In this document: one piece after another, positions 3,040 through 63,903 of the stretch
Numbering within the stretch: position 1 is the first letter of the stretch
Layout: every line of letters starts with the position of its first letter
Sequence record: MK250017.1
Reading direction: 5' to 3' (one strand)
DNA: 64,000 nucleotides
Notes under the pieces: model-generated
Told to the model about the DNA's origin: nothing
Database searches by the model: none
The model's input: only the letters and a program-made list of their open reading frames with translations
Position numbers and translations under genes: made by a program

Positions 3040-3390
3040 ATGGTAACAATATTTATAGGATTTATAGGATTTGTATTATGTCTTATACAATTAATCATAT
3101 TTGATTGGTTCACTAAAAAATTTACATATACAAATAAATGGTTTATATATAATAATTTAGAAAAAAGAGAAGATTCAAAGCCAATAAAAATAAAACGGTA
3201 TTGGTATATCTTATATTGTATATGTATGTTAATACCTATAGCTAATTTATTTTTATTCATAATCTGTTTCTTCATGTCATTCATGATGAGATTGGATTAT
3301 AATTACTATTATAATGGAAATAACATTACAGTATTAACATTAATAAAATTTAAAAATAAATTAAAATATTATTTAAATACAGAAGTATAA
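3040..3390 (+). CDS. small membrane protein (116 aa)
   Basis: Two hydrophobic segments; ATG-TAA. Confidence 0.65.
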   Translation: MVTIFIGFIGFVLCLIQLIIFDWFTKKFTYTNKWFIYNNLEKREDSKPIKIKRYWYILYCICMLIPIANLFLFIICFFMSFMMRLDYNYYYNGNNITVLTLIKFKNKLKYYLNTEV

Positions 3391-3437
3391 AAATTAAGGT
3401 TCTAATCTTATTCACAAAAGATTAGAACCTTAATTTT
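3390..3437. terminator. bidirectional intrinsic terminator
   Basis: Perfect 20-bp inverted repeat AAAATTAAGGTTCTAATCTT (3390-3409 / 3418-3437) between convergent genes. Confidence 0.85.
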
Positions 3438-3449
3438 ATTTAGTTTTAA

Positions 3450-4268
3450 TTAAATAATACATTTTTCACCACAATATGGGCAGAACTTAAATTTTGAATT
3501 AAGTTTTCTTCCACAATTAGTACAATATATTTTATTCAAATCACTTGTCGTATATGGTTTCCTTGATTTAGGAAGAATCTTTATATATTCTCTTTTAAAT
3601 GGATAATTTTCAAATTCATTATTTACTGTTTCAAATTTCTGATTTGAATAACCACCATTTTCAATTCTACCTGTTTCAATAGTAGTATCATTAACATTAG
3701 TTTTATATAAAGCTTTATTATATGTATTTCCATCAATACTTGCACAACAACAGTTAGTAACATTATTTGTTAATAAAACATTATTATTAGTATCTGAACA
3801 TGTAACTACAGTATCATAACTTGGAACAGTATATGTATTTTGATTAGAAATTAATGGACTCTCTTTCCATAAAACATTTAATGTATTATAAATATTTGTT
3901 TTAATTCTTGATGATACTCTTTCTTTATAAAACTTTACAGTAATATTACCATTATTCGCAATAGCATGTTTTACCTGTACATCATTATCATCTACTTCAT
4001 AAGTAGAAAATTTAAATTTAACCTGATTATCCAAATAACGTTCTAACCATACTCTCTCACCTGGTTTCAAAACTAACATACCATCTATATCTTTACCATT
4101 AAATGTAAATGTAACACCAATAGTAAACTGTTCAGAATTAAATAACTGAATTTCAAATTCATCATTATTGTCCATATAAACAACACGTGAATCTTCATTT
4201 GTAGAATACTCTTTCAAAAGAGATTTGTTAATAGCTAACTAAGCCATCTTCTTTTCATTAATAATCAT
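3450..4268 (-). CDS. C-terminal zinc-ribbon protein (272 aa, one TAG at codon 10)
   Basis: ATG 4268 MIINEKKMA-TAG-LAINKSLLKEY joins track ORF 3450-4217; C-terminal CTNCG...CPYCG. Confidence 0.75.
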
Positions 4269-4269
4269 A

Positions 4270-5003
4270 AGTCATATATAATTTATTTTAAACTTATCTA
4301 TTAAACTTTCAATTCTATACAAAATTTCAAAAGTACTTGAATAATACTCAGTCTAATAGAAATATCATTATCTAATTTTAATTATAATAGATATAAATTA
4401 AAAAATAATTTTTAATATCTATCTTTAACTTAATACTATATATTAATTATACTACAATATTTATAAAAAGTTTATATTTACTAATAAATTTTAAAAAATA
4501 ATTTAATAAATAAAAAATATTTACATTTCCGAAAGACTTACCTTACTAAATTCATTAAATTATTAAAAATTATAAATAAATTTTTTCATATATTTATATA
4601 TAGATCTATCACAANNNNNNNNNNNNNNNNNNNNNNNNNNNNTGAGTTCTGAGAAAAAGTCTACATTTTTTCTAAATATTTTTAATGAATTCTAAAAATA
4701 ATTCATAACTAATTAATATTCAATAAATTAAATAAAATATTTTTCATATAATTTTCATATAAATTAATATAAAATAAAAATTCAGATCTAAATTAATATA
4801 AATTTAAATCTGAATTAAAAATTAAATTTTTTATATACTATATATAATATCTATCTCAANNNNNNNNNNNNNNNNNNNNNNNNNNNNNNNNNNNNNNNNN
4901 NNNNNNNNNNNNNNNNNNNNTTATTTTTTAACTATTTTTAATGATATTTTTTTAAACTTTACAAATAATATCTAATATAACTATAGAAAATTAATTTAAT
5001 TTA
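4270..5003. other. very AT-rich non-coding divergence region with two N-gaps and a hairpin
   Basis: No credible ORF; lies between divergent genes; AATTCAGATCTAAATT / AATTTAAATCTGAATT near 4779-4816 pairs at 15 of 16 positions. Confidence 0.5.
4954..4981 (+). promoter_or_regulatory. putative middle-class promoter (AAAC-N18-TATAAC)
   Basis: AAACTTT 4954 and TATAAC 4976; same 22-nt offset as more than 10 other sites. Confidence 0.5.
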
Positions 5004-12152: not shown

Positions 12153-12175
12153 TATAAAAAGAAAAATTACCTAAT

Positions 12176-14374
12176 ATGTCAAAAATAAAGAATTATCAAA
12201 AGTTAGATAAAAATTCTGTATTTAATAATTGTAGTTATGCATAGTCAGCAGGTGTTTATTATAATTAGGAAGGTTTTTCTAATGTAACAAATAAAATTTA
12301 GGATATGGGAACATATAATCCTGATAAGTATATATTAGGAAATATAACTAAACCAAATAAGAAGACATTTGTTAATTATGATAAACATGAAATAATTAAT
12401 AAAGGAAATAATACAAAAATTAACATTAATAATATAAAGAATAATAAGGAAACATATGCGTATGTTTCTGGTATTATGGTTCCTACTATTGAAGCAGAAG
12501 TAAAACCTATTACAGAAATATTAAAAGAAACTGAAAATAATATTACAAATTCAAAAAATATAGTTATTAATAGTAAAGAATTTAAAGAATTACATAAAGA
12601 AGAAAAAGTTATTAATAATAAAGACGTTAAACAAGTAAAAAGTAAATCATCTGTAAATTTATTTTCTAAAGTATTTGAAAATAAACAATAGAATGATATT
12701 AATGATATTAATGATGATAATGTAATATATTTAAATGGTTGGGTATGGTTAAATAGATTTAATAAACCATATGCACATAATTTTGGTGATGATATAAATT
12801 TTTCATTTTTGACAGAAATAACAGGTAAGAAACATAAGAAATACGATAATGAATTTGTAACAAATTATTTAATGATTGGAAGTATTTTTATTGATAAGTA
12901 TATAAATGATTTTACAGAAGTATGGGGTAGTGGAATGTTAAGACATTAGGTATTATATAAAAAACCAAATAAAGTATATGCAGTTAGAGGTCCAAAAACA
13001 CGAGAGATCTGTTTAGCATCAAATATAGATTGTCCGGAAATATATGGAGATCCTGCATTATTAATACCATATTACTATTATCCTTATGTAATGAAAAAAT
13101 ATAAATTAGGAATTATTCCACACCATTCTCATATTAATTCAGATATATTAAATAAATTTAAAGATAATAAAAATATTAAGATTATTAATTTTACAAAATA
13201 TAATGATTGGAAAGATATAATTAAAGAAATTGTAGAATGTGAATTTATTATATCTGAAAGTTTACATGGTTTGATTATATCAGAAGCATTTAGAATTCCT
13301 AATATATGGATTTCATTAGGAAATAATATAGGATAGAATTTGAAATATGAAGATTTCTTTTTATCTATTAATAAACCATTATATGATTCATATTTAGTAA
13401 ATGAAGATACAACATATGAAGATTTATTAAAATTAAAAGATAATTATAATTCAACATTTGAAATAGATTTACAAAAATTAGTTGATGCTTGTCCTATAAA
13501 ATTAAAGAATTTAAATTTATATAATCAGATTAAACCATATACAGGAAAAGTATTATTATGCTGTATAGGAAAAATGGAAAATAATTATATACGAGAGTTT
13601 GTAGAATATTATAAAACAATAGGATTTGATAATATATGTTTATATGATAATAATGATATAGATGGAGAACATTTTGAGGATGTAATAGGTGATTATATAG
13701 ATTCAGGATTTGTAATATTAAAAGATTGGAGAGGAAAAGAATTAGCATAGATTCCATCATATACAGATTGTTATAATACATATAAAGATGAATATGATTG
13801 GATTGCATATTTTGATATAGATGAATTTTTAGATTTAGCTTGTAATAATATAAAAGAATTCTTATCTGATGATATGTATAATGATAAAGGTATAAATTGT
13901 ATAAGAGTTTGCTGGAAACAATTTACTGATTCTAATATTATTAAAACAGATGGAAATTATTCAGTAACTAAATTTAATCAATATATACCATTAGATAAAG
14001 ATAAATATTGTGCATAGACAAAAATTATAATTAAAACGTAGTTAGATAATATCATATTTGATTCACCACATGGTGTTATATATAATAAAGATTGCCATAT
14101 TACATGTGTAAATACAAATGGTGATTTATGTACAAATGATATAATTATAAATAATCCTACATGGGAAAATGCATGTTTAAATCATTATCGTTTTAGAACA
14201 ATAGAGGAATATGTATTAAATAAAATGGTAAGATTATGGCCAACAACATATATGAATGGTGGAAAAACGGGATTAAATTTAAATTTATTTTTTAGATATA
14301 ATACATTTTCATAGGAAAAATTAGATTTTGCAAATTATCTTTTAGATAAATATAATATAAGTAGAAATGAATAA
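12176..14374 (+). CDS. polysaccharide pyruvyltransferase / glycosyltransferase fusion (732 aa, 10 TAGs)
   Basis: One frame through track ORFs 12305, 13091, 13340. Pyruvyltransferase motifs HNFGDD, IGS, VWGSG, AVRGPKTR, YGDPALL, LGIIPH, SESLHGLI; then GT motifs ENNYIREFVEYY, LYDNND, WIAYFDIDEF. Confidence 0.85.
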
Positions 14375-35306: not shown

Positions 35307-36803
35307 ATGAATAATACGTATCTTGAAAACGTTATATTCNNNNNNNNNNNNNNNNNNNNNNNNCTTGTTTAGTCATTTAAAGGAAGTTATTTTACTAATC
35401 CTTATTTAAAAACTTTATTTGATATTATTAAACCACATATATTGGAATATAGAGCTGAACCAACTGAACAGCAATCTATAGATTTAGTAAAACTTGCAAA
35501 TAAAGAAGATAAGGTAACAGAAGATCAAATACATGCTTTATGGCAAACAAGAGATATGGTTAGCCAATATACAGATGAATGGTTAAATCAGAATACATAG
35601 GCATTTGGTGAATGGCAAAACCTTATGAGTGGTCTTAGACGTGTTATTGAATATGTAAAAACTATTCAAGCTGATGTTACATTTGAAAATTGTGCAGAGA
35701 TTGTTCAGCATGCGAAATCAATGTTTCAATCAGATACTAATTTTACATTGAACAATTCAAAAGGGCATGATTTCTTTGATCCTGTTAATCATAAGCAAAC
35801 TGAACTTGAAACTAGAAAGACTGGTTATAATTTTGTTGATCAGTGTTTGAAAGGTGGTTGGGCGAATAAAACATTAAATGTATTTATGGGTTCACCAAAA
35901 GTAGGTAAGTCTATGTGGCTTTGTAATTTATGTGCTAATTCTGTAAGAAATGGAGAGAATTCTGCATATATTACATTGGAGATGGCGTATCAGCTTGTTG
36001 CACAACGTATCGGTTCAAATCTTTTTAATATTCCTATCGAAGAATATGAAAAAAGTGCTGCAGATGCAAATTTTATGCAACAGAAGATGAAAGAATTTTA
36101 TATGAATTCACTTATCACGCCAGGTAAGTTTATCATAGAAGAATTCCCAACATCATCTGCAACTGTATATGATATAGAATCTTTCTTACTTAAATTAGAG
36201 GAAGAACTTTCTACTGAAGCAAAACCTTTTAAATTTAAGAACATTTTCATTGATTATGTTAATATCATGAAAGATGCGAAGAATCCTAATTCAGAAAGTA
36301 CATATTTAAAAATTAAATCTATTTGTGAAGATGTTCGTGCGATGGCACAAAGAAATAACTGGTGTGTTATTTCTTTAACTCAGACAAATAGAACTGCATA
36401 TGATTCAACTGATATTGGTATGAGTAATGTTTCTGAATCTGGTGGTTTGATTGCAACAGTTGATAGTTTATTCGGTATTATTCAATCTTCAATGATGCGT
36501 GTTGATAATACATATTATTTAAAAGCTGTTGCTATTCGAAATTCTGGACATATGGGAGATAAAAAGAAATTTGATTTTAATCCAACATATTTAAGAATTG
36601 AAGAAAATCTTGATGAAAATATTATTCCTGAAAATGTATCACTTGATGGTTTAGTAAAAGATAAACATAAGAATGATAATACAGGAAATAATAATTATCA
36701 GCAATATCCTATAAATGTTGGAGTTCGTCCAAATGTAATAGAATCACCTCAATTAGGATTAACAGAAACACAAATACAGGCACAAGATTTATTTAGCATG
36801 TAA
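35307..36803 (+). CDS. DnaB-family replicative helicase, T4 gp41-like (about 498 aa; spans N-gap; TAG at codons 22 and 98)
   Basis: Walker A GSPKVGKS, YITLEM, IFIDYVN, LTQTNR, VSESGGL; frame continuous from ATG 35307 across the 24 N. Confidence 0.88.
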
Positions 36804-52361: not shown

Positions 52362-55300
52362 ATGAAGGTAACAAAACGTGATGGTAGTTTTGAGAATTAT
52401 AGTGTTTAGACAGTTAAACGTGCAGTTAGAGAAGCGTTTAAGTCAACAAAGACTAAATACTCAAAAGACACAATTTCGAATATTGTAAGTTCTATTACGC
52501 CATATGATGGCATTCCTGTAGAAGAAATACAGGATCAGATAGAAACAAGTTTGTATTCTCATGATCAGCCTAAAGTTGCAAAAGAATTTATTCTTTATCG
52601 CAATAAGAAGAAGGAAATCAGAGAATGGGTTGCTAATAAAGAAGCATTTATTGAAAGATATAAAAATGCATCAAATACTGCAAATAGTACAATTGATGAT
52701 AATTCTAACGTATCATCTAAGAACATCGGTGTATTAAATGCAGAAATTCATAAAGGTGATAATATTCTTGTAAGTAGAGGAATGATTACAAGAAAGTTAA
52801 AAGATTTATTCCCTGATTTTAAAGCAAAACAATATCAAAAAGATTTAAAAAATCATATTATCTATAAGAATGATGAATCAAGTTTTGCTGGTGCTATAAG
52901 TCCTTATTGTGTTAGTGTATCTATGTATCCATTTCTTAATCATGGATTGGAAAAGATTGGAGGTTTATCATGCCATCCACAAAATCTTGATTCCTATTGT
53001 GGTATGTATGTAAATCTTGTATTTGCAGTTGCAGCACAATTTGCAGGAGCAGTAGCAACATCAGAATTCTTGGTATATTTTGATTATTTTGCACGAAAGG
53101 AATTTGGAGATGATTACTATTTGCATAGTAAAGAATTCTATAAGATTGGTCCAAAATATCGTAAGTTACTTAATGAATCTAATTACTGGTGTAAAGATGT
53201 AGATACACTTAGAAAACATGATTTTGGTACAGATGAATTAAATAAATTGAGAGATGAACTTGTTTATAATTCAGAACGACCATTATCTGATGAAGAACTT
53301 AAAGAATATGAAACAGAACTTTCTAAATATGATGTAGAAGGTTCAATAAAAGATTTTACAAATCCTATTAAGATTGGTGATGGTACAAGAACTATTGGTT
53401 CATGTATACAACAATTCTTCCAACAAGTAGTGTATTCAATTAACCAACCCGCGGCAAGTCGTGGTCTGCAATCTGCATTTGTAAATTTCTCTTATTTTGA
53501 TAAGCCTTTCTTTGAAGGTATGTTTGGGGAATTTGTATTTCCAGATGAAGAAGGTACAAGACCTTGTTGGGAAAGTGTTTCATGGTTGCAGAAAGATTTT
53601 ATGATTTGGTTTAATAAAGAGCGCCTTCGTACTATAATCACTTTCCCTGTTGAAAGTTTTGCATTGGTATATAAGGATGGAAAGTTTGTAGATGAAGATT
53701 CTGCAGATTTTGTTGCAGAAGAATATTCTCGTGGTCATTCATTCTTTACTTATATGTCAGATACTGTTGATTCATTATCAAGCTGCTGTTTCGATGGTGA
53801 TACACCATTTATGTTTGTAGAACCTCTTAATATGGAAGAGCATGGTGGTAATAATGCATATATGGTTTCAACTATTAAAGATGCATATGAAAAATATAAA
53901 GATGATATAATTAATGTATATCATATGAATTTTAATGGTACTACAGGTAAATGTACAGGTGAATGGGTAAATGCAAAATTTGTAAAAGCACAAGCTATTC
54001 AGGAAGTACGAATTTATTTTAAACCAGATGATTTCAATCCAGATGAGTCAAGGAATGTAATGAGAGTTACGCCGGATCATATATTCCCTGTTATTGATGA
54101 TAATGGATTTATTACAGATAAAAATGCATATTTGTTACAGACTGGAGATCAACTTATTTTTGAATATGCACAATATATGGGATTATTTAGAGATGAATTC
54201 CCTGATAGAGATCAAGATTTAGTAAAACGTGCTATTTCAAAAGTTGAAATTGTAAATCTTGATGAACCAAAGGATTATTATTGTGTAGAGTTATGTGATA
54301 AAAATATTGAACCATACTTTTTGTTACCTAATGGAAATATTACACATAACTGTCGCCTTAAGAATAAGATTCAAACAAAGGAATTTAATTTTACAAATGG
54401 TAACTTAGGGATCAACTTGGGTCCTTTATGTGCTTAATTGCTAATCAAGCAATGTATTAATATAGCGATATTAATGCATCGGTGAAGCCTAAACATAAGT
54501 TGTGAAACTATATGCATGGTAATACCGAACCAAGTTAATAAATATGTTATAATTTTACATTTATAATATATGAATAATAAAATATTTACAATTTACAAAA
54601 TATCATTTCCAAATGGAAAAGTATATATTGGTTAGACATATCATTATCATTAGAGAATTAAAGAACATTTAAATGAAATGAAACATAGTGATTATAAATT
54701 ATATAGAGCTATGAGGAAATATAATATAAATGAAAATAATTTTTCTATAGTAGAAGAAAATATTTTAACATAGAACGATGCAGATAATAAAGAAATATAT
54801 TATATCAATTTATATGATAGTTATAATAATGGATATAATTCTACATTAGGTGGACATGCTGCAACAATAACAAAAATAGGAGAAGAACATCCTAAAGCTA
54901 TATTAAATGATAATGAATTATTAGAATTAAGAAAAATTAGATATTCTATGAAATATACATTTGGAGAAGTATATGATATGTATAAAAATAAAATGTCAAA
55001 AAGTGGTTTTTCAAAATATTGGCATTATTATACAAGACCTGAAATCGGAGAAGAATATAATACTGATGAAGTAAATAAATTTTATAAATCTGATAGGAGA
55101 ACAAGAAGAGGTATATTACATGCAAATTCAAGAAATTTATCAGATGAAGAAGTTTTAAATATAAGAATACGATATTTTGTAAATGGTGAAAAAGAAGATG
55201 ATATTTTTAAAAAATATAAACACTTATATTCAAAGAGTGGTTTTAATAAAATATTATTTGGATAGTCATATATGCATGTAAAAATGCCTATTAAAACAGA

Positions 55301-56546
55301 TAAGTGTAAATAGAAATTACCATAGTTATCAAAAGAAGAAGTAATTTCATTAAGAGAACAATATAATAATGGTAAGTCTATTAATGAATTAAAAGTTGGA
55401 AAATATGAAAAATATTCAATGAATAATTTTAGAAATATGTTAATAGGTAGAACATATAAAAATTATTAATGTGTGTGGAGGTCATCCCCTAAGTGATGAG
55501 CAGGAGGAGTAGGGCTACTATTGATACGTAGCAGTATTTTAGGAAACGAAGTACTTTAAATGCCGAAATAGTGCAATGTTTATTAACATAATAAACATAA
55601 GATATGACCCGGACCATATAGAAATATATGGAGAAAACGTCAAACAGGTTCAAAATCTGTAATAACATTAAATCTTAGTCGTATAACACAAGATTGGTTT
55701 AATAGTGTTAAGAAAACAGGTGTAACAAAAGAAAATGTAGAAGAACATTATGATGAATTGTGTCATTATTTTGGTGACATTCTTGATAGAGTATACAAAT
55801 ATCATACTGCATATAATGAACTTCTATGGGATATGTATGATGCTGGTTTGCTTCCGGTATATAAAGCTGGATTTATTAGTTTGAATAAGCAATATTTAAC
55901 AATTGGATTAAATGGTCTTAATCAAATGGCAGAATTTTTAGGAATTACATGCAATATAAATCCTCATTATGAAAAATTATGTCAAACAATATTTGGATAT
56001 ATTAAGCAGAAGAATCAAGAAGCTGCAGGTATGTTTAACGGACACAAGCTCACGTTTAATACCGAGTGCGTACCAGCGGAAAGTCTTGCAATAAAAAATT
56101 ATAATTGGGATAAAGAAGATGGATATTGGGTAAGTGATGATACAAATCTTTATGCATCTTATATTTTTAAACCAAATGACAAGAGCTTATCAATTTTCGA
56201 TAAAATTACATTACATGGTCGTGATTATATCGGAGATTTCTTAGATGGTGGTTCTGCGGCTCATCTTAATTTATCAGAGCATTTATCTAAGAAACAAATA
56301 AAACATATCATGCAATTTGCAGCACAGGTAGGATGTCAGTATTGGACATTTAATGTACCTAATTGTAAGTGTGAAGATTGCGGATATATATCAAAAACTC
56401 CATTTGATAAGTGTCCAAAATGTGGATCAGTTCATATAAGTTTATATGACCGTATCATTGGATATTTAACTAAAATTTCGAACTGGTCAGATGGACGTCA
56501 ACAAGAACAAAAGACACGTGTTTATCTACATAGTGAAAATATTTAA
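52362..56546 (+). CDS. nrdD: class III anaerobic ribonucleotide reductase, join(52362..54412,55640..56546); 985-aa precursor, 797 aa after intein removal
   Basis: ATP cone MKVTKRDG (TAG at codon 16); SLSSC|intein|CRL; spliced NGNLGIQTGSKSVITLNLSR; VPAESL; CxxC..CPKC; glycyl-radical RIIGY. Confidence 0.93.
53787..54350 (+). mobile_element. cis mini-intein in NrdD (188 aa, no endonuclease)
   Basis: Block A CFDGDT; block B VTPDHIF; block F YYCVEL...YFLLPNG; terminal THN then Cys+1. Confidence 0.92.
54413..55639 (+). mobile_element. group I intron (1227 nt) with GIY-YIG ORF in nrdD
   Basis: GGGAT|...AAAACG|TCAAAC; P1 guide GGGTCCTT; P4 TCGGT 54479 / ACCGA; P7 GAGGTCAT 55478 / ATGACCC 55604; S-like AAGATATGACC; P9 CCATATA-GAAA-TATATGG. 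Confidence 0.92.
54570..55469 (+). CDS. intron-encoded GIY-YIG endonuclease (299 aa, 6 TAGs)
   Basis: TIYKISFPNGKVYIG-TAG-T, RIKEH, LYRAMRKY, EIYYI, NGYNSTLGG; HTH-like C-terminal repeats. Confidence 0.9.
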
Positions 56547-56572
56547 GTTTTTATAACCTATTTTATTTTTAA
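56530..56572 (+). repeat. 43-bp direct repeat, copy 1 (nrdD 3' end and stop)
   Basis: ATAGTGAAAATATTTAAGTTTTTATAACCTATTTTATTTTTAA, identical at 57723-57765. Confidence 0.95.
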
Positions 56573-56610
56573 TAAGTTATAACATATACTTTATGTTATA
56601 ACTTATTTTT
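56571..56610 (+). terminator. intrinsic terminator after nrdD
   Basis: AATAAGTTATAACATA / TATGTTATAACTTATT followed by T-run. Confidence 0.75.
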
Positions 56611-56677
56611 ATTTAATAGTATTAAAGGTTTATCCTATTATTCAATTAGATAAATATTATAAATGAAAATATAATAT

Positions 56678-57739
56678 ATGAATTATAATAAAATTTATAA
56701 TAATATTATTAATAATGCAAAAAATCGAAATAATATAAACAATCAATACTTTGAAATACATCATATTATCCCTAAATGTATAGGAGGAACTGATGATGAT
56801 AAAAATTTAGTAAAACTTACATTACGTGAACATTTTATATGTCATGAATTATTAGTTAAAATATATCCAGATATACAATCATTAAAATGCGCATTATGGA
56901 TTATTTGTATTACGACATTAGAAGCAAAAAAAGAATATATAACAAATAATATAAAATATAAAAATAATAAATTACCTATTAATCATAGAGTACAACATTT
57001 TTTAAATGATTTTGAAAAACATATTAATATATCTTCAAGAGATTATGAATATTGTAGAACATTATATTATATAGCAACAAAAGGGAAAAAACGAACTGTT
57101 GAGCAATGTAAAAAAATTTCAGATGCGACAAAGCATGCTATGAAAGATCCATCTAGAGTACAATTAAGAAGAAAAGGTGTATTGGGTAGTAAATTTTATT
57201 ATGATTTAATAACAAATAAATCTTATAAATGGTTTCCGGGAGATCCAGATATTGATTTAAATAAGTATGCGTGGGGTAGAGGAAAGAAAATGAGTTTAAA
57301 ATCAAAAACATTAATGTCTGAAAATTTATCAAAATATAAAAAAGTATATTATTATAATGATAATTTAAAATCATCTACATGCTTTTGTAAAGATTAGATA
57401 AAAATATTACCTGATAGTTGGCATTTAGGAAGAAAATTCGGCGGATATAATAAAATGAAAATATTTATTATACCATTATTAAGAAATGTACATTTTAAAT
57501 TAGTATGTAATTAGCATTTTATTGATAATATATTTTATCATATTAATTTATTAAACAAATAGGAAATAAGTATAGGTATATTAACGATTAATGAAAAAAT
57601 ATTAAGTGACTTAATACAAAAAAATATTGATATTAATGATGAAAAATATATTACAATAATATATAACAATATATTAAATAATATAAACCAAATTAAAACT
57701 ATTAATAATAGCGTTTATTTAAATAGTGAAAATATTTAA
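56678..57739 (+). CDS. free-standing HNH homing endonuclease, T4 Mob-like (353 aa, 3 TAGs)
   Basis: EIHHIIPKCIGGTDDDKNLVKLTLREHFICH; ATAAATA 56650 upstream; ends VYLNSENI-TAA inside repeat copy 2. Confidence 0.85.
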
Positions 57740-57765
57740 GTTTTTATAACCTATTTTATTTTTAA
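57723..57765 (+). repeat. 43-bp direct repeat, copy 2 (end of the HNH gene)
   Basis: Identical to 56530-56572. Confidence 0.95.
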
Positions 57766-57770
57766 ATTTT

Positions 57771-57806
57771 AATGATTCCAGTATACTACTACTGGAATCA
57801 TTTTTT
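57771..57806 (+). terminator. intrinsic terminator
   Basis: AATGATTCCAGT / ACTGGAATCATT followed by T-run. Confidence 0.8.
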
Positions 57807-57891: not shown

Positions 57892-58599
57892 ATGAATTTA
57901 TTTGATAACGAATTTGATGATATAATTGATTCAGAAACTACATCTTCATCTGTTTCTACAGAGATGAGAGTTAATGAATTTAAAAAATGGAAGCAAGAAG
58001 TATTAAGTTTAAAAAAGAGAAAAGATGATATATATAACCGTAGAAATATAGTTCATAATATAGATGATATAATATTAGAAGGAAATTCAGTTACTTTAAT
58101 TTTTGATTCTAATGTTGAGAAAAATGTTATATTATGCCCTATTAATTATATTATATCATGCCCTCTACCGATCAATAATATTAATATAGAAAATAATACA
58201 GAAAATGATATACGATTAATTTTATATTCACCAAGAAAATATAATGATTCAAAATTAGAAGAAGATATTGTGAATAAAGATGATTTAGAAATGTTATCTC
58301 TTATTAACTTTAATAATATGAATATAACAGATATATTATTTAGAGGTACATTTTCTACATTTGATGATTATCATAAGTATCTAGATATTGTAAAGAACAA
58401 ATTTAATTATGCTACAATATGGATGAATTACGAAACACGTATAGAACATCCTGATACTACTATAAAACCATTAAAAAGAAATAACTGTCATATATCAGCA
58501 TTATTGAGATATGATGAATTAATAGATACTATTATTTACAATGATACTGTTAATATATCATATTGTAATTTTATTAATAGTGGAATATTGCAAAATTAA
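57892..58599 (+). CDS. hypothetical protein (235 aa)
   Basis: ATG-TAA; CAACTTT 57841 / TATAAT 57863 upstream. Confidence 0.7.
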   Translation: MNLFDNEFDDIIDSETTSSSVSTEMRVNEFKKWKQEVLSLKKRKDDIYNRRNIVHNIDDIILEGNSVTLIFDSNVEKNVILCPINYIISCPLPINNINIENNTENDIRLILYSPRKYNDSKLEEDIVNKDDLEMLSLINFNNMNITDILFRGTFSTFDDYHKYLDIVKNKFNYATIWMNYETRIEHPDTTIKPLKRNNCHISALLRYDELIDTIIYNDTVNISYCNFINSGILQN

Positions 58600-59800: not shown

Positions 59801-62800
59801 TTATTTGTCATTATTACTATTTGTATCTAATGTATTTTCATCTATATCATTATTATTCGAAAATTCTACTTGCTAATTTGTATTTTTAGTCATGTAATTT
59901 GTAAATGTTATTAATGTGCCTGGTATTCTATCTGAACCTAATATCGCTTTTACAGATTCCCAGAATTCTCTTTGTTTTATTGTATCTGTTCCTATATGAT
60001 AATGTTTTGTTGTTGCACCTGTATCATCTCGTGCCTATTCTATATAAGCAGATACACCATAATCATAGAATAATTTTAATATAGTAGGACTTTTCATTAT
60101 AATATTTGTCATAAGTTCAGTAAAATCCATACCGTTATTAATAATATCTATAGCTTCGCCATATAAATGTCGTGAATTATTCTTTTTAAAATACATTACT
60201 TCACCAATAGCATTCATACATTTATAATAATCATATTTTTTTATAAATGCATTACCATCAACTTTATTACCATATTCATCTACTGCCCATCTTCTTCCAG
60301 ATACTAATTTACATTTATTATCAGATTCAGATAAAATAGTTTTATAAATATCCTTCATAAAAGATTTTAAACCAGTTAATGGTATAGTAGAACCAGCTAC
60401 ATAATCAGATTTCTTTACATATTGATCTATCATATCCATATTAAAATTAACTGCCTCTACTGTTTCTTTTCCGTGTGCATTATATATAGTACCGGCTTCT
60501 TCTTGTTCTTGCTATTGTTCATCAGTTGTAGAACTTATATTCTATTTTCTCTATGCAGTCACGACTGCATCTTCAGATGTTTTTGCACCTTTAATATGTT
60601 CTGCTCCATATCGTTTTAATGCATCATAATATGCCATTCTAGCAAGTTTACCATTTCCAATATCTACTAATACAATAGTATTTGCTGTTTTTTTATCTAT
60701 TGTTTTACCTGATTTATCTTTAATTTTAGATGGTACTGGCCATTCTCTTCTAACTAATTTAACATTTGTTCTCCAATTTGTACCCTAACCCTAATCATTA
60801 TCAGTATCGAATACCCATTCAATACCATCTATAATATACCAACCAGATTCTGCTTCATACATGCATTCTTCTATTTTTGTACGTGCTTGACCAGTTCTAA
60901 TAGCTTGTTCTGCTCTATTTAAATCCATTAAAACAATAGGCATTTTTTCACCACGAACAATACTTAAGTTTGCACCATTTAATTCAACAAGTAAATACTG
61001 TTTTTGTAACTATAATAAATTTCTCATATTATGTTCATATGCAACTTCATAAAATCTATGAGTATTTCCAGATGACATCATATTATTTCCGGTTCCTTCA
61101 AGATTTGCTGCATCTCCATCAGATTGTTGATTTGTAATTTTCTCTGGTTCATTTTTATTTGATGATTGAGTTTCTGAAGTAGCCATTGCAGAATCACCAC
61201 TTGCATATGTCATATTTCTTCCAGGTCCTAATAATACGAAGAAATCATTATCTGCTCGTGTTGGATCAAATTTTGTTCTATTTAAACATAATGAAAATTC
61301 AACACTATAATTAGGATTATTTGGATCTATTAAACCTGTGTTAACTGATGAATATTGCATTTTACAATTTAATCCCACAAAATCCTATATTTCCTATGCA
61401 TTATTAAGTAATCTCCAATTATTAACATGATATACTGTTGCTGCTTCATTATCATCTGTAATATTAGTAAATATCTTTGTCTATATATGCGGTTTTACTT
61501 TCTATTCTTCATCTGTTTTAGTTGCTGCTTTACCATCAATAGCTCTATTATTAATAAATGTATTTGTCCAGAATGTCATATCTATTGATTCATCATAACC
61601 ACTTTCACCTAATAATCTATTAATATTCATGAAAGATAATCCATATCTCGGATCTATCCATGATTCAAAAAATGAATTAGAATCTTTCCATGCATGTGTT
61701 GTCAAATCATGTAAAAACATTTCTGGTGATTTACAATTACACCAAACCATTACATCGTTTGTATCATCTGGATCACAAAAGAAGAAACTTAATCTTAAAC
61801 GTTTTGCAAGATCCATCATAGCATCTCGTGATGAACCATTAAAATTATATCTAGATTCTTCATTTCTTAAATCTGGTACATATAATTCTCCGGTTATAAT
61901 CTATGTCTAATATTTCTGATATTGCGTCTAATCCATCTAATCAGAAACAACATTTGTAATTCTGAAATCACATCTCATAGACTTAATCATTGCATGTCCA
62001 CTCTGAAAAAATACACTGCATCTATCACCTTGCTTTACAAAATCCTTTTTTAATAAACCAGGGTCTGATGTAGTTACTATAAGTCTCATCGTAGGTAAAA
62101 CACCTGTTAATGGCATTTGATAAATTTCATACTCATTATAATTCTTATAATAACCGGTTTCCATAGAAAAATGCTATATTTCTGTAGATTCAAAATAATG
62201 ATCATTTATACGAATTATAGGATATACGGCACCTTTATTATACCATTGATTCTCTTTAATATTAGGACTTGTTACATCTGGTACTGAAATACCAATTACA
62301 TCAGGATTATTAATATCAGCGCCTAATGGTAATGAACTACGAGGATTATCTTTATCTTTATTTCCCATTGAATCCTCAAATATACCTTTATTTGAAGAAT
62401 CTTTAGAACCTTTACCATTGTCATCAGAATCATTTGCATTATCTCCAGTATTTGATGTATTCTTATTTGTTCCTGAAGAATCATTCTCTGACTCATCATT
62501 TGTATTAGAATTATCATCATTACTTCCATCAGAATTAGATGTATCTTTATTAGATGTATCAACCATATCTAATATTTTATCTTCATCTGATTTTGAATAA
62601 CAAACACCACCATATTTTCCTGAACCATAATCAATAGTATAATTAAAAAAATCTTTCTTTATTATCTAATTTGTTGTTACATCTTTATATACTTTTGTTT
62701 CTGTATATAATTTTGCATTCTTACCTTTAAATATGATATTATAAGTATTATTTATTGTGTCAGTATAATAATAATGTGTTATAGTTTTATCTGATGATAC

Positions 62801-62842
62801 TTCTCCTTTTTTTAAATATTTAATACCATTTATCGTTAACAT
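59801..62842 (-). CDS. baseplate hub-like protein with C-terminal M15-type zinc peptidase (1013 aa, 18 TAGs)
   Basis: Five track ORFs (62174, 61937, 61502, 61010, 60035) share one frame from ATG 62842 to TAA 59801; GWYIIDGIEWVF...WRTNVKLVRR; SRHLYGEAID (H-x6-D) and HYH. Confidence 0.7.
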
Positions 62843-62844
62843 AA

Positions 62845-63903
62845 TTATTTAGATTTCTTTGTATTTTTATTTGTATTAGATTTATCTGTACTATTAGTTT
62901 TCTTATCTGATTTACCGGTAGATGTATCTTTTTTACCGGTAGATGTATCTGCAGATTTTTTTGCAACATCCTCTTTAGTAATACCTTGATTTGCATATTC
63001 TATAGCTGGATCATTTGAATTATATGGTATTTTTAATTCATCTAACACAATACAAGAATCATTTGTAGAATATATACGTGTATGACTACTTGCAAATTGA
63101 TCTTTTGATGTAAACATTGTTTGTTTAGATGTTGCTGATGCAGTTTGAAATGCATTATCTTTTGAATTTTCAAATATATTACCACCTTGACCGGTAAATG
63201 TTTGATATTCATCATGTACAGGATATGCATTAGAATTTCCCATACCTGCACCACCAGTATCACCAAAACCACCACCGTCTAAACCACCGCCAGAAACTTC
63301 AGTACCTAATCCTGATAAATCAGCTAAGTTTACAGAACCCATTTTACTTAATACTGCATTTGCCCATGATGTTCTGCATGTTAGTGCACCAATATATCCA
63401 TCTTTAAATGTACGTCTGCTACCATCTGCCATATATGATGTTTTACACCATGTATATGATTTCATAGATTGCTATGAACGTAATCTTGTTCCTTTACCTG
63501 CAGAACCATTTTCATAACCGCGTAGCACAATATCAGTTGATTGTCCAACTGATGTAGTTTTTCTTAACAAATTAATAAATGATTCAGAGCATCCTTTTGT
63601 TACAATAGCTATTTGCTAATCTAATGACCAATTTTCTATAGGTCTAGAATTATTGAATTGTCTCTATATTTGACGTTTCCATGCATTAGACCATTGTGCA
63701 AGTCCGGCACCATATCCGGAACCATTTGCAGATGAACCTTTAAATCTTCCAGATTTTTCAGCAGCGTTATATGCTCCAGGATCACAACCAGATTCTTCCA
63801 TAAAACATCCTGCAAATCCAGCAGCCTAGAAATCTTTAAGATGCCATGTATCCATTATTTTCTTTGTTATATAAACACCATTTAATAATTTTTTACCTGC
63901 CAT
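62845..63903 (-). CDS. phage tail lysozyme-domain protein (352 aa, 4 TAGs)
   Basis: ATG 63903; F-TAG-AAGFAGCFMEESG.DP, GAGLAQW, LRGYE fit the phage tail lysozyme family; low-complexity C-terminal tail. Confidence 0.8.

What the first reader, a model, noticed from the sequence alone, without database searches (positions are those of the whole stretch)
56521..57806. HNH endonuclease gene inserted by duplicating the nrdD 3' end and reusing its stop codon
Seen: a perfect 43-bp direct repeat (about 52 bp with two mismatches) flanks the 1.2-kb cassette. Copy 1 encodes nrdD VYLHSENI-stop, and copy 2 encodes the HNH protein's own VYLNSENI-stop in frame. Each copy is followed by a different terminator. 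Inference: a recent insertion footprint; recombination between repeats would excise the gene cleanly, and the last ~100 aa may be filler captured by read-through.
Basis: partly seen in the sequence, partly recalled or inferred. Interest (0 to 1): 0.7.

Follow-up and report, generated by a model that had tools for sequence, protein, structure and literature searches.

The report
Homing endonuclease carrying spare nrdD tail
A selfish endonuclease gene sits just behind the anaerobic ribonucleotide reductase gene (nrdD) of the gut megaphage Lak-A1 and brings a replacement copy of that gene's last eight codons, so nrdD stays whole while its old tail now forms the end of the endonuclease gene; this layout is known from fungal mitochondria but I found no phage example.

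Summary
The repeat is real: 56520-56572 and 57713-57765, 53 nt with 2 mismatches and a 43-nt perfect core. The window is Prevotella phage Lak-A1.

The HNH frame reaches copy 2's stop only by reading three TAG codons. This genome reads TAG as Gln, shown by domain continuity and by TAG/CAR interchange among orthologues.

The 353-aa protein is a Mob-like free-standing HNH homing endonuclease. In 15 of 15 contexts examined, its family lies directly 3' of nrdD.

The last ~110 aa form a conserved, selected and confidently folded domain (dN/dS 0.10-0.27, pLDDT above 90). Only the final 6-8 residues come from nrdD.

"Recent footprint" is also wrong. The same duplication occurs in several Lak lineages with diverged copies, and in a longer, unfused form in two more distant relatives.

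HNH-less alleles with a single tail exist in both the Lak-A and Lak-B clades. Copy 2 matches those alleles, and copy 1 travels with the cassette.

Best reading: a mobile endonuclease cassette carrying a surrogate host-gene 3' end, like fungal mitochondrial mORFs, with later in-frame fusion to the displaced tail and local gene conversion. Interest is moderate.

The parts
52362..54437 (+). nrdD 5' piece: ATP-cone plus the first part of the NRDD domain. It contains one in-frame TAG and an intein-like block at 53787-54350.
   Evidence: Pfam ATP-cone E=4.9e-17, NRDD E=3.9e-27, weak Intein_splicing; coordinates.
54570..55469 (+). GIY-YIG homing endonuclease gene (6 in-frame TAGs) inside the ~1.2-kb gap between the two nrdD pieces. 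This is context, not part of the cassette.
   Evidence: Pfam GIY-YIG E=6.5e-6; phrog_7168 E=2.6e-19.
55608..56546 (+). Open frame holding the nrdD 3' piece (NRDD domain positions 305-560, Zn ribbon, glycyl-radical RIIGY). It ends TRVYLHSENI-TAA.
   Evidence: Pfam NRDD E=1.3e-43.
56520..56572 (+). Repeat copy 1: the last 8 nrdD codons, the stop and 26 nt of 3' UTR. This is the cassette-borne (surrogate) tail.
   Evidence: The UTR type after copy 1 is constant in all HNH-bearing Lak-A genomes.
56571..56607 (+). Perfect 16-bp-stem hairpin followed by a T-run: the terminator now serving nrdD and the left end of the cassette. It is conserved in L005, L009, L017 and L018.
   Evidence: I11; -16.2 kcal/mol, z -5.8.
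56678..57739 (+). Mob-like free-standing HNH homing endonuclease, 353 aa when TAG is read as Gln. It has an HNH module (invariant H28, H29, N43, H52, H56), a linker of small strand-helix modules that are highly conserved in the family (KWFPGDPDIDL...WGRG), and a conserved helical C-terminal domain (~256-346).
   Evidence: phrog_655 E=1.9e-39; Pfam HNH E=5.9e-4; T4 mobE 56% identity, E=6e-15 over residues 23-77; alignments A1 and A2; AF2 pLDDT 90.7.
57395..57397 (+). In-frame TAG (codon 240), read as Gln. Further in-frame TAGs lie at 57512-57514 (codon 279) and 57560-57562 (codon 295).
   Evidence: Orthologues have CAA/CAG or TAG at the same positions.
57713..57765 (+). Repeat copy 2: the displaced resident nrdD tail, now the last 8 codons plus stop of the HNH ORF, and 26 nt of UTR.
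   Evidence: Its coding part is identical to the single tail of the HNH-less relative L014.
57771..57802 (+). Original nrdD terminator (13-bp stem, T-run), now terminating the HNH gene. It directly follows the single nrdD tail in HNH-less Lak-B3 and L014.
   Evidence: (-17.0 kcal/mol, z -6.6).
57892..58599 (+). Conserved downstream neighbour gene (235 aa, no family assigned): the right flank of the insertion site in both HNH-bearing and HNH-less genomes.

Best explanation
SHOWN. The 1.19-kb unit (copy 1, a hairpin and the HNH gene) is a Mob-like, free-standing HNH homing-endonuclease cassette. Its family lives at the 3' end of phage nrdD genes. In Lak phages the cassette is flanked by two copies of the nrdD tail. 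The upstream copy completes nrdD and has its own terminator hairpin. The downstream copy sits in front of the ancestral nrdD terminator. In the Lak-A/B branch it is fused in frame to the endonuclease ORF, so the enzyme ends on old nrdD codons and uses the old nrdD stop and terminator. The ORF is read through three TAG codons because this phage decodes TAG as Gln. Presence or absence of the cassette is polymorphic within both Lak clades, and HNH divergence is incongruent with flank divergence.

INFERRED.
(a) The element arose as mitochondrial mORF elements do. An endonuclease-initiated break in the nrdD 3' region was repaired from a donor with good homology only on the nrdD side (one-sided, illegitimate double-strand-break repair). 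This copied the donor's nrdD tail plus the endonuclease gene and pushed the resident tail downstream.
(b) A 63-nt in-frame deletion between an I/V-Y codon pair at the native HNH end and the V-Y of the displaced tail later produced the fused form.
(c) Homing among co-infecting Lak phages maintains the element, and gene conversion between the copies made the 43-nt perfect core in Lak-A1.
(d) HNH-less alleles are either unoccupied sites or products of recombination between the two copies.
(e) The cleavage target probably lies in the conserved glycyl-radical-to-tail region of nrdD.
For: **Identity.** The window is 100% identical to Prevotella phage Lak-A1.

**TAG=Gln.** Pfam domains run across TAGs in nrdD, the GIY-YIG gene and a glycosyltransferase. 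TAG and CAR interchange among HNH orthologues. Lak phages are published as TAG-recoded.

**HNH family.** phrog_655 E=1.9e-39. T4 mobE and mobD-like hits. Catalytic residues are invariant.

**Location.** The gene lies directly 3' of nrdD in 15 of 15 distinct contexts, including standard-code phages at 36-41% identity. Two of these lie between nrdD and nrdG, like T4 mobC (T4 table).

**Real C-terminal domain.**

**Duplication classes**:
- short and fused: window, L005, L008, L009, L017, L018;
- long (66 nt) and unfused: L011, and L013 (diverged);
- none: L010, L012, L019, L021, L022, L024, L026.

**Two-allele behaviour.** In L011, 4 of 5 differences between the copies are synonymous, including CAG/TAG. 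The untranslated copy in L013 keeps the conserved NrdD residues NWS-GRQ-E-K-R-IY. L009 has PSDNI upstream and NDENI downstream in a Lak-A-like background. In L018, copy 2 plus its UTR is identical to the HNH-less L014 over the ~65-nt tail-plus-UTR span shown; L017's copy 2 has the same UTR type but differs by one codon (GTT>ATT) and one T in the T-run. Copy 1 has a different, cassette-constant UTR type.

**Empty alleles.** L014 is 96.8% identical to the window in the flanks. Lak-B1 to B9, L015 and L016 also lack the cassette, whereas L005, 94-96% identical to Lak-B3, carries it.

**Mobility.** Window-L009 flanks are 89-93% identical but HNH is 83.5%. Window-L008 nrdD is 80.5% but HNH is 88.4%.

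**Fusion geometry.** In L011 the native I-Y codons and the V-Y of copy 2 are 63 nt apart and in frame.

**Precedents.** One-sided illegitimate DSB repair at microhomology in T4 (PMC2988022). mORF elements with an inserted C-terminus, an endonuclease and a native C*-terminus (PMC3630166).
Against: There is no biochemical or read-level evidence: the cut site, the enzyme's activity and ongoing excision are all untested.

'Copy 2 = resident allele' rests on few diagnostic sites. It is partly circular if HNH-less L014 itself arose by deletion from an L018-like genome, since a crossover in the shared 33 nt would give exactly L014.

L010, whose HNH is 65% identical and so lies between L013 and L011 by identity to the window's HNH (no tree was built), shows no duplication. 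Either the duplication was lost there or it arose more than once.

In the window both copies share the same UTR type, which by itself would also fit a young in-situ duplication.

The excess of differences between the window and L014 lies next to L014's other insert, not next to the HNH site, so no co-conversion tract can be assigned to the HNH gene.

Pfam HNH scores just below its gathering cut-off (20.4 against 21.4 bits).
Confidence: 0.6

Rival explanations
1. In-situ duplication. On insertion, the resident nrdD tail itself was duplicated, by a widely staggered break filled in on both sides or by replication slippage. Both copies then descend from one resident sequence and diverged or were homogenised afterwards.
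For: Both window copies share the same 26-nt UTR type and differ at only 2 of 53 positions. The L005 copies are nearly identical and both of the local PKENI type. HNH-less alleles could all be secondary deletions.
Against: A 53-66-nt duplication is far longer than known target-site duplications, and no transposase or terminal inverted repeats are present. The untranslated copies in L011 and L013 differ from copy 1 mainly by synonymous or conservative changes, as expected for two functional nrdD alleles rather than neutral decay. L009 carries two different tail types. In L017 and L018, copy 2 keeps the UTR type of the HNH-less allele while copy 1 has another.
Confidence: 0.2
2. A recent, lineage-specific insertion into Lak-A1. 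Under this model the near-perfect repeat is a fresh footprint and the cassette is a newcomer in this genome.
For: 51/53 identity with a 43-nt perfect core. An HNH-less relative is 96.8% identical in the flanks. HNH and flank divergence are incongruent, which shows that transfers do occur.
Against: The same fused architecture, with the same junction at V-Y-L, occurs in L005, L008 and L009 with diverged copies. It also occurs in L017 and L018, where copy 2 has another UTR type. The fusion and the duplication therefore predate Lak-A1. High identity here is explained by gene conversion of about 26 nt.
Confidence: 0.1
3. The HNH gene really ends at TAG 57395 (239 aa). The 340 nt up to copy 2 would then be non-coding or a decaying remnant that happens to be open.
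For: Table 11 stops there. PHROG and Pfam profiles match only residues 1-240. No suppressor tRNA lies in the window. The host presumably uses the standard code, so a truncated product early in infection is conceivable.
Against: The frame has 0 TAA/TGA in 113 codons, against 11-13 TAA in each of the other frames. dN/dS is 0.10-0.27. Full-length homologues of 330-356 aa exist, including in standard-code phages without any TAG. TAG and CAR interchange at the same codons. pLDDT is 90-98. TAG positions are scattered over the whole gene in orthologues, for example codon 23 in L011 and codon 45 in L008.
Confidence: 0.03
4. Assembly artefact: the repeat misjoined contigs, or collapsed or duplicated a region.
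For: Repeats can mislead short-read assemblers. I could not lay reads.
Against: The structure is identical in six curated Lak genomes from different samples and hosts and in independent IMG/VR and ENA assemblies. It is also in Logan contigs from 13 studies. A 53-nt repeat is shorter than typical reads.
Confidence: 0.01

Closest known systems
T4-type Mob free-standing HNH homing endonucleases (mobE between nrdB and nrdA; mobC between nrdG and nrdD)
   Same: The N-terminal HNH module is homologous: T4 mobE 56% identity over residues 23-77, E=6e-15, with mobD and 'Mob-like' annotations among 1053 phage records. The gene is free-standing, lies beside a ribonucleotide reductase gene, and shows patchy presence among close relatives. 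Two distant family members occupy the nrdD/nrdG slot, like mobC (T4 table in PMC2988022).
   Different: The C-terminal helical domain has no detectable solved-structure relative and no PHROG or Pfam match. The T4 elements reviewed in PMC2988022 are not described there as carrying a duplicated host-gene 3' end ('duplication' occurs 0 times in that text). The gene here is TAG-recoded. Cleavage activity is untested.
Mobile endonuclease ORFs (mORFs) of fungal mitochondria: Allomyces macrogynus atp6; Glomus sp. atp6, atp9, cox2, nad3 (PMC3630166)
   Same: The three-part layout is the same: host gene core, inserted C-terminus, endonuclease ORF, then the displaced native C*-terminus. The inserted copy completes the host gene, and the native copy matches the element-less relative. 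[quoted passage not shown]
   Different: Those endonucleases are LAGLIDADG or GIY-YIG in organelle genomes, and some are fused in frame to the host gene's upstream part. Here an HNH enzyme in a phage has its own start and its own upstream terminator hairpin, and is fused only to the downstream remnant. The duplicated segment is much shorter (8-22 codons).
One-sided, illegitimate double-strand-break repair during intron homing in phage T4 (Parker, Belisle and Belfort 1999, as summarised in PMC2988022)
   Same: It provides a tested phage mechanism by which an endonuclease element enters a site with homology on one side only, leaving junctions at microhomologies. The V/I-Y microhomology at the HNH/nrdD-tail junction fits this.
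   Different: That was shown for an intron in engineered T4 crosses. Nothing here shows that this pathway produced the Lak structure.
Collaborative homing: a free-standing endonuclease next to a gene that carries an ORF-less group I intron at the enzyme's target (cyanophage psbA/F-CphI; named from my own knowledge, with the concept described in PMC2988022 and PMC8393795)
   Same: Lak-B3 and L011 carry a ~245-nt ORF-less, group-I-like insert at the glycyl-radical codons, about 25 codons upstream of the HNH cassette site. All four combinations of intron +/- and HNH +/- occur.
   Different: The target of this HNH enzyme is unknown. Rfam does not recognise the insert as a group I intron. No association between intron and HNH presence was seen.

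Membership tests
HNH homing endonuclease, Mob-like free-standing type | HNH (beta-beta-alpha-metal) catalytic motif with conserved His/Asn/His | tested here: met
   phrog_655 'homing endonuclease' E=1.9e-39. Pfam HNH E=5.9e-4, 20.4 bits, just under the 21.4 cut-off. H28, H29, N43, H52 and H56 are invariant in 28 homologues. tblastn to T4 mobE E=6e-15.
HNH homing endonuclease, Mob-like free-standing type | Own ORF between host genes, not inside an intron or intein | tested here: met
   The ORF 56678-57739 starts 131 nt after the nrdD stop, behind a terminator hairpin, and is followed by the next gene at 57892. The position is the same in 14 other contexts.
HNH homing endonuclease, Mob-like free-standing type | Patchy presence or absence among close relatives, and phylogeny incongruent with the flanks | tested here: met
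   HNH-less L014 against the window (96.8% flanks). HNH-bearing L005 against Lak-B3 (94-96%). HNH and flank identities are incongruent.
HNH homing endonuclease, Mob-like free-standing type | Site-specific cleavage of the element-less allele and preferential inheritance in mixed infection | not testable with these tools
   This needs enzyme assays or crosses. Lak phages are uncultivated.
mORF-type element carrying a surrogate host-gene C-terminus | Host-gene C-terminal segment present twice, flanking the endonuclease ORF, with the upstream copy completing the host gene | tested here: met
   nrdD reads through copy 1 to its stop in all eight duplicated loci.
mORF-type element carrying a surrogate host-gene C-terminus | Downstream (native) copy matches the element-less close relative, and the upstream copy differs | tested here: met
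   In L018, copy 2 plus UTR is identical to L014 over the span shown; L017's copy 2 has the same UTR type but two small differences. Copy 1 has another UTR type. The coding part of the window's copy 2 is 27/27 identical to L014, against 25/27 for copy 1. Caveat: there are few sites, and L014 could be a deletion derivative.
mORF-type element carrying a surrogate host-gene C-terminus | Inserted copy of foreign (donor) origin | tested here: inconclusive
   Suggestive evidence: L009's two tail types, mostly synonymous differences in L011, and the conserved residues in L013's copy 2. The segments are too short for a tree.
Transposon-type target-site duplication | Short duplication (about 2-15 bp) made from one resident sequence, with a transposase and terminal inverted repeats | tested here: not met
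   The repeat is 53-66 nt. No transposase ORF or terminal inverted repeats lie at the cassette ends. The copies behave as different alleles.
TAG-to-Gln recoded phage (Lak clade) | In-frame TAGs inside conserved domains, and TAG aligned with Gln codons in orthologues | tested here: met
   Frames of 1016 and 739 codons contain 18 and 10 TAGs and no TAA or TGA. Domains span TAGs. TAG/CAR interchange occurs among orthologues. The window is 100% identical to Lak-A1. Published recoding.
TAG-to-Gln recoded phage (Lak clade) | Phage-encoded suppressor tRNA(CUA) and/or RF2 | not testable with these tools
   No tRNA lies in the 64-kb window, and no whole genome is held for this window.
Group I intron (for the ORF-less insert in Lak-B3 and L011; not present in the window) | Conserved core detected by a covariance model; U.G pair at the 5' splice site; terminal G | tested here: inconclusive
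   Rfam gives no hit at E<=1. In Lak-B3 a P1-like helix places a U.G pair at the predicted 5' splice site, the insert ends in G, and splicing restores RIIG-YLTK. 7 of 47 predicted pairs are compensatory, from only two sequences. The L011 splice sites could not be resolved.

The most novel reading that the evidence does not exclude
The displaced nrdD tail may be a maintained working part of the mobile element rather than a passive scar. It would act as a short right-hand homology arm that lets a free-standing endonuclease move between megaphage lineages whose downstream genes have diverged (the next gene is only 73% identical between Lak-A and Lak-B). It would also act as a built-in direct repeat allowing scar-free loss. 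This would be a phage counterpart of mitochondrial mORFs, possibly working together with the ORF-less intron at the glycyl-radical codons (collaborative homing). It would explain why an untranslated 66-nt copy stays 92% identical to the functional tail in L011, even though the HNH proteins of that lineage and Lak-A1 are only 59% identical.
Probability: 0.25. Interest if true: 0.6.

Novelty: new variant of a known kind. Interest (0 to 1): 0.4.

Why it matters
Free-standing homing endonucleases are usually pictured as sitting between genes. How they enter new sites without damaging essential genes is known mainly from T4 crosses and fungal mitochondria. This locus gives a natural series in uncultivated megaphages:
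- no duplication;
- a long, unfused duplication;
- a short duplication fused to the endonuclease ORF;
- copies homogenised by gene conversion;
- alleles with no cassette at all.

The series shows how an endonuclease cassette can carry a surrogate 3' end for an essential gene and then take over the old stop codon and terminator.

It is also a practical warning for annotation. Under table 11 this gene is called as a 239-aa fragment and the relationship to the repeat is invisible. The locus offers a defined enzyme and substrate pair (the 353-aa protein and the L014-type nrdD end) for testing homing in Lak phages.

Tried and rejected
- **Read mapping.** I used P0001:1-85, P0001:165-353, alignment A2 and a DNA pattern from the repeat and its flanks. 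Local pairwise comparisons inside the Python box, between the window and loci already fetched, did include that stretch.
- **Whole genome.** None is held for this window, so there was no suppressor-tRNA search.
- **Rfam.** No group I intron was found in the window's nrdD gap or in the Lak-B3 and L011 inserts.
- **Fold searches of the C-terminal half.** Foldseek against the PDB gave nothing at E<=0.001, and VIA-align gave a best Z of 3.6. No fold was assigned.
- **TAG-gated truncation.** I considered that the three TAGs clustered in the last third give a truncated enzyme early and the full enzyme late. I rejected this as a conserved feature, because TAG positions are scattered in orthologues.
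- **Strict vertical inheritance with loss in Lak-B.** I entertained this after and withdrew it after one search showed that HNH and flank divergence are incongruent.
- **Co-conversion tract.** The excess synonymous differences between the window and L014 lie at 56000-56400, beside L014's other insert at 56249/56250, not beside the HNH site. The test was uninformative.
- **Paralogues.** There are no HNH paralogues in the window.
- **Sigma-70-like promoter scan.** It found no more than chance: 17 sites against 19.5 expected.
- **Literature.** Searches found no description of this architecture in Lak phages or other phages. Absence from the held library is not proof of novelty.


Full report
**1. 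The observation**

Positions 56520-56572 and 57713-57765 are a 53-nt direct repeat with two mismatches and a 43-nt perfect core, spaced 1193 nt apart. Similarity ends abruptly on both sides. About 4e-15 such perfect 43-mers are expected by chance in this 2.3-kb, 26% GC stretch.

Copy 1 holds the last eight codons of the nrdD 3' piece (VYLHSENI), its TAA (56544-56546) and 26 nt beyond. Copy 2 holds VYLNSENI, a TAA (57737-57739) and the same 26 nt.

Each copy is followed by a different strong hairpin with a T-run: 56571-56607 (-16.2 kcal/mol, z -5.8) and 57771-57802 (-17.0 kcal/mol, z -6.6).

By the standard bacterial code the HNH ORF (start 56678) stops at a TAG at 57395 after 239 codons. The frame reaches copy 2 only through three TAGs, at 57395, 57512 and 57560.

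**2. The genome reads TAG as a sense codon**

The 113 codons after the first TAG contain no TAA or TGA, whereas each of the other two frames has 11-13 TAA. Elsewhere in the window, frames of 1016 and 739 codons are open except for 18 and 10 TAGs.

Pfam domains run straight across TAGs. This holds for the ATP-cone of nrdD, the GIY-YIG domain of the gene in the nrdD gap, and two glycosyltransferase domains. Among HNH orthologues, TAG and CAA/CAG replace each other at the same codons.

The window is 100% identical to Prevotella phage Lak-A1. Lak phages are published as TAG-recoded phages of standard-code hosts (10.1101/2021.08.26.457843). No tRNA lies in the window and no whole genome is held for it, so the suppressor tRNA itself was not seen.

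I used TAG=Q and no other change of code.

**3. What the gene is**

Read with TAG=Q, the protein has 353 aa. It matches a PHROG homing-endonuclease family over residues 1-240 (E=1.9e-39) and Pfam HNH weakly. Its HNH module is 56% identical to T4 MobE (E=6e-15) and similar to many 'Mob-like' endonucleases of T4-type phages. H28, H29, N43, H52 and H56 are invariant in 28 homologues.

More than thirty full-length homologues of 309-356 aa exist. Alignment covers the whole length down to about 36% identity.

- it aligns across the family;
- its dN/dS (0.10-0.27) equals that of the nuclease part (0.16-0.29);
- the AlphaFold model of residues 165-353 has mean pLDDT 90.7, with 90-98 over most of the helical domain.

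Only the last nine residues, the part encoded by the repeat, fall to 77. No solved structure resembles this domain. Its role, presumably DNA recognition, is unassigned.

**4. Where the family lives**

In all 15 distinct genomic contexts I examined, the gene lies immediately downstream of nrdD. These include standard-code phages whose HNH is only 36-41% identical and whose other neighbours differ.

Two distant members lie between nrdD and the nrdG activase. That is the slot of mobC in T4 (T4 table in PMC2988022).

So this is a lineage of free-standing HNH endonucleases specialised on the 3' side of nrdD. nrdD is a known hotspot for introns, inteins and endonucleases in phages (PMC3653736, PMC12880540).

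**5. The duplication is a shared, old feature with a history**

| Class | Loci | Features |
|---|---|---|
| Short, fused | window (with Lak-A2 and Lak-C1), L005, L008, L009, L017, L018 | The HNH ORF runs into the last 8 nrdD codons. |
| Long, unfused | L011, L013 | The HNH gene has its own stop (...EIYY*, ...TVYK*). A longer second copy of the nrdD end follows, starting at the NWSDGRQ codons. |
| None detected | L010, L012, L019, L021, L022, L024, L026 | The family ends natively in ...LN-x-x-Y plus 0-8 residues. |

Identity between the copies differs widely within the fused class. The copies are nearly identical in the window and in L005, where both are of the local PKENI type. They are clearly diverged in L008 (NKESI/SKDNI) and L009 (PSDNI/NDENI). 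In L011 the long copies are 61/66 identical.

In L011 the native I-Y codons and the V-Y codons of the downstream copy are 63 nt apart and in frame. One in-frame deletion at that microhomology would therefore produce the fused form found in Lak-A1. This step is inferred.

**6. Which copy is the resident one**

In all HNH-bearing Lak-A genomes, copy 1 is followed by one 3'-UTR type (beginning GTTTTTATAACC) and then by the cassette hairpin.

In L017 and L018, copy 2 is followed by a different UTR type (beginning GTTTAAAAACC). L018's copy 2 plus UTR is identical, through the terminator hairpin, to the single tail of L014. L017's has the same UTR type with two small differences. L014 is a Lak-A-clade contig that lacks the cassette and is 96.8% identical to the window in the flanks.

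The coding part of the window's copy 2 is also identical to L014's tail, whereas copy 1 differs at two sites. In the Lak-B clade the single tail of Lak-B3 likewise agrees with copy 2 of the HNH-bearing L005 at the diagnostic site.

The differences between copies look like differences between functional nrdD alleles:
- 4 of 5 are synonymous in L011, including CAG/TAG;
- L013's untranslated copy keeps the residues conserved in NrdD.

This matches the pattern used to recognise mobile endonuclease ORFs in fungal mitochondria: an inserted C-terminus, then the endonuclease, then the native C*-terminus (PMC3630166).

There is a caveat. If L014 arose from an L018-like genome by a crossover in the 33 nt the copies share, its identity to copy 2 follows automatically. 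The diagnostic sites are also few.

The window's 43-nt perfect core is best explained by gene conversion of copy 2's UTR to the copy-1 type in the Lak-A1/A2/C1 lineage.

**7. Mobility**

The cassette is polymorphic within both clades:
- window, L017 and L018 against L014;
- L005 against Lak-B1 to B9, L015 and L016.

HNH divergence does not follow flank divergence. L009 has the closest flanks to the window (89-93%) but the most distant HNH (83.5%). L008 has more distant nrdD (80.5%) but a closer HNH (88.4%).

Both observations are expected for an active homing element. They argue against simple vertical descent, which I had first favoured.

The HNH-less alleles have exactly one tail followed by the ancestral terminator. 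I cannot tell the two apart.

**8. Mechanism**

Shown: the anatomy, the recoding, the family and its fixed position, the conserved C-terminal domain, the series of duplication states, the empty alleles and the incongruent divergence.

Inferred: the enzyme cuts HNH-less nrdD in its conserved 3' region, and repair from an HNH-bearing co-infecting genome copies the cassette.

The founding event most likely had homology on the nrdD side only. The donor's nrdD tail and the endonuclease gene were copied in and joined to the broken recipient. This left the resident tail downstream, from about the NWS codons onward. One-sided, illegitimate double-strand-break repair with junctions at microhomologies has been demonstrated for intron homing in T4 (Parker et al. 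1999, as summarised in PMC2988022).

The left edge of the long downstream copy lies about 8 codons after the glycyl-radical glycine. This would place the break in or just upstream of that stretch. In Lak-B3 and L011, a ~245-nt ORF-less, group-I-like insert sits at the same stretch. The arrangement is reminiscent of collaborative homing, but this remains a lead only.

**9. Comparison and novelty**

As an enzyme this is another Mob-like free-standing HNH homing endonuclease next to a ribonucleotide reductase gene, which is ordinary.

The architecture is less ordinary. The cassette carries a surrogate host-gene 3' end, and the displaced native end is then co-opted as the endonuclease's own C-terminus, stop codon and terminator. 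This corresponds to mitochondrial mORFs. I found no description of it in a phage in the held literature, though that library is incomplete.

I rate it a new variant of a known kind, of moderate interest.

No N stretch was filled; the N runs lie at 4615-4642, 4860-4920 and 35340-35363, away from this locus.

After no letters of 56935-56972 were sent to any database search. Local pairwise alignments in the Python box did include them, as stated under Tried and rejected.

Noticed in passing
window 52362-56546: nrdD is a mosaic. The 5' piece (52362-54437) carries an intein-like 188-aa block (53787-54350, C...THN|C; weak Pfam Intein_splicing). A ~1.2-kb gap holds a TAG-rich GIY-YIG endonuclease gene (54570-55469), probably an intron since the 5' piece reads a few codons into it. 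The 3' piece follows. Rfam finds no group I intron there.
   Followed up: partly
L001 (Lak-B3) 3267-3509; L011 about 3094-3337: A ~245-nt ORF-less insert sits at the glycyl-radical codons (RIIG|YL) and is absent from the window. In Lak-B3 a P1-like helix places a U.G pair at the 5' splice site, the insert ends in G, and removal restores the frame. 7 of 47 predicted pairs are compensatory between the two lineages. Rfam gives no hit. In L011 the insert appears shifted by 7 nt and I could not resolve its splice sites.
   Followed up: partly
window 56249/56250 and 56125-56139 (insertion points seen in relatives): Relatives carry further inserts in the nrdD 3' piece that the window lacks. L014, L005, L008 and L009 have ~1 kb at 56249/56250; in L005 this holds a GIY-YIG gene and leaves a 78-aa last piece. 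L017 has ~285 nt at the same point, and Lak-B1 has ~760 nt near 56125-56139. Element content differs between genomes that are 95-97% identical.
   Followed up: partly
window 56000-56400 against L014: Differences between the window and the HNH-less relative L014 are about twice as dense here (7-12 per 100 nt against about 3). They are almost all synonymous and flank L014's own insert. This may be a co-conversion tract of that other element.
   Followed up: partly
window 59801-62848 (- strand): A 1016-codon frame with 18 in-frame TAGs and no TAA or TGA. It has no Pfam or PHROG match. Its C-terminal ~190 aa are conserved in Lak-B3. Under table 11 it falls into fragments of 105-134 aa.
   Followed up: no
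window 12158-14374 (+ strand): A 739-codon frame with 10 TAGs that joins a polysaccharide pyruvyl transferase domain with glycosyltransferase family 92 and family 2 domains. It is invisible as one gene under table 11.
   Followed up: no
window 57443-57715 (HNH residues ~256-346): The helical C-terminal domain of the endonuclease is predicted with pLDDT 90-98 but has no convincing match among solved structures (best Z 3.6) and no profile match. It may be an undescribed DNA-recognition module of nrdD-associated Mob-like enzymes.
   Followed up: partly
It lies inside the HNH gene (codons ~86-99). Nothing about the sequence itself looked unusual.
   Followed up: no
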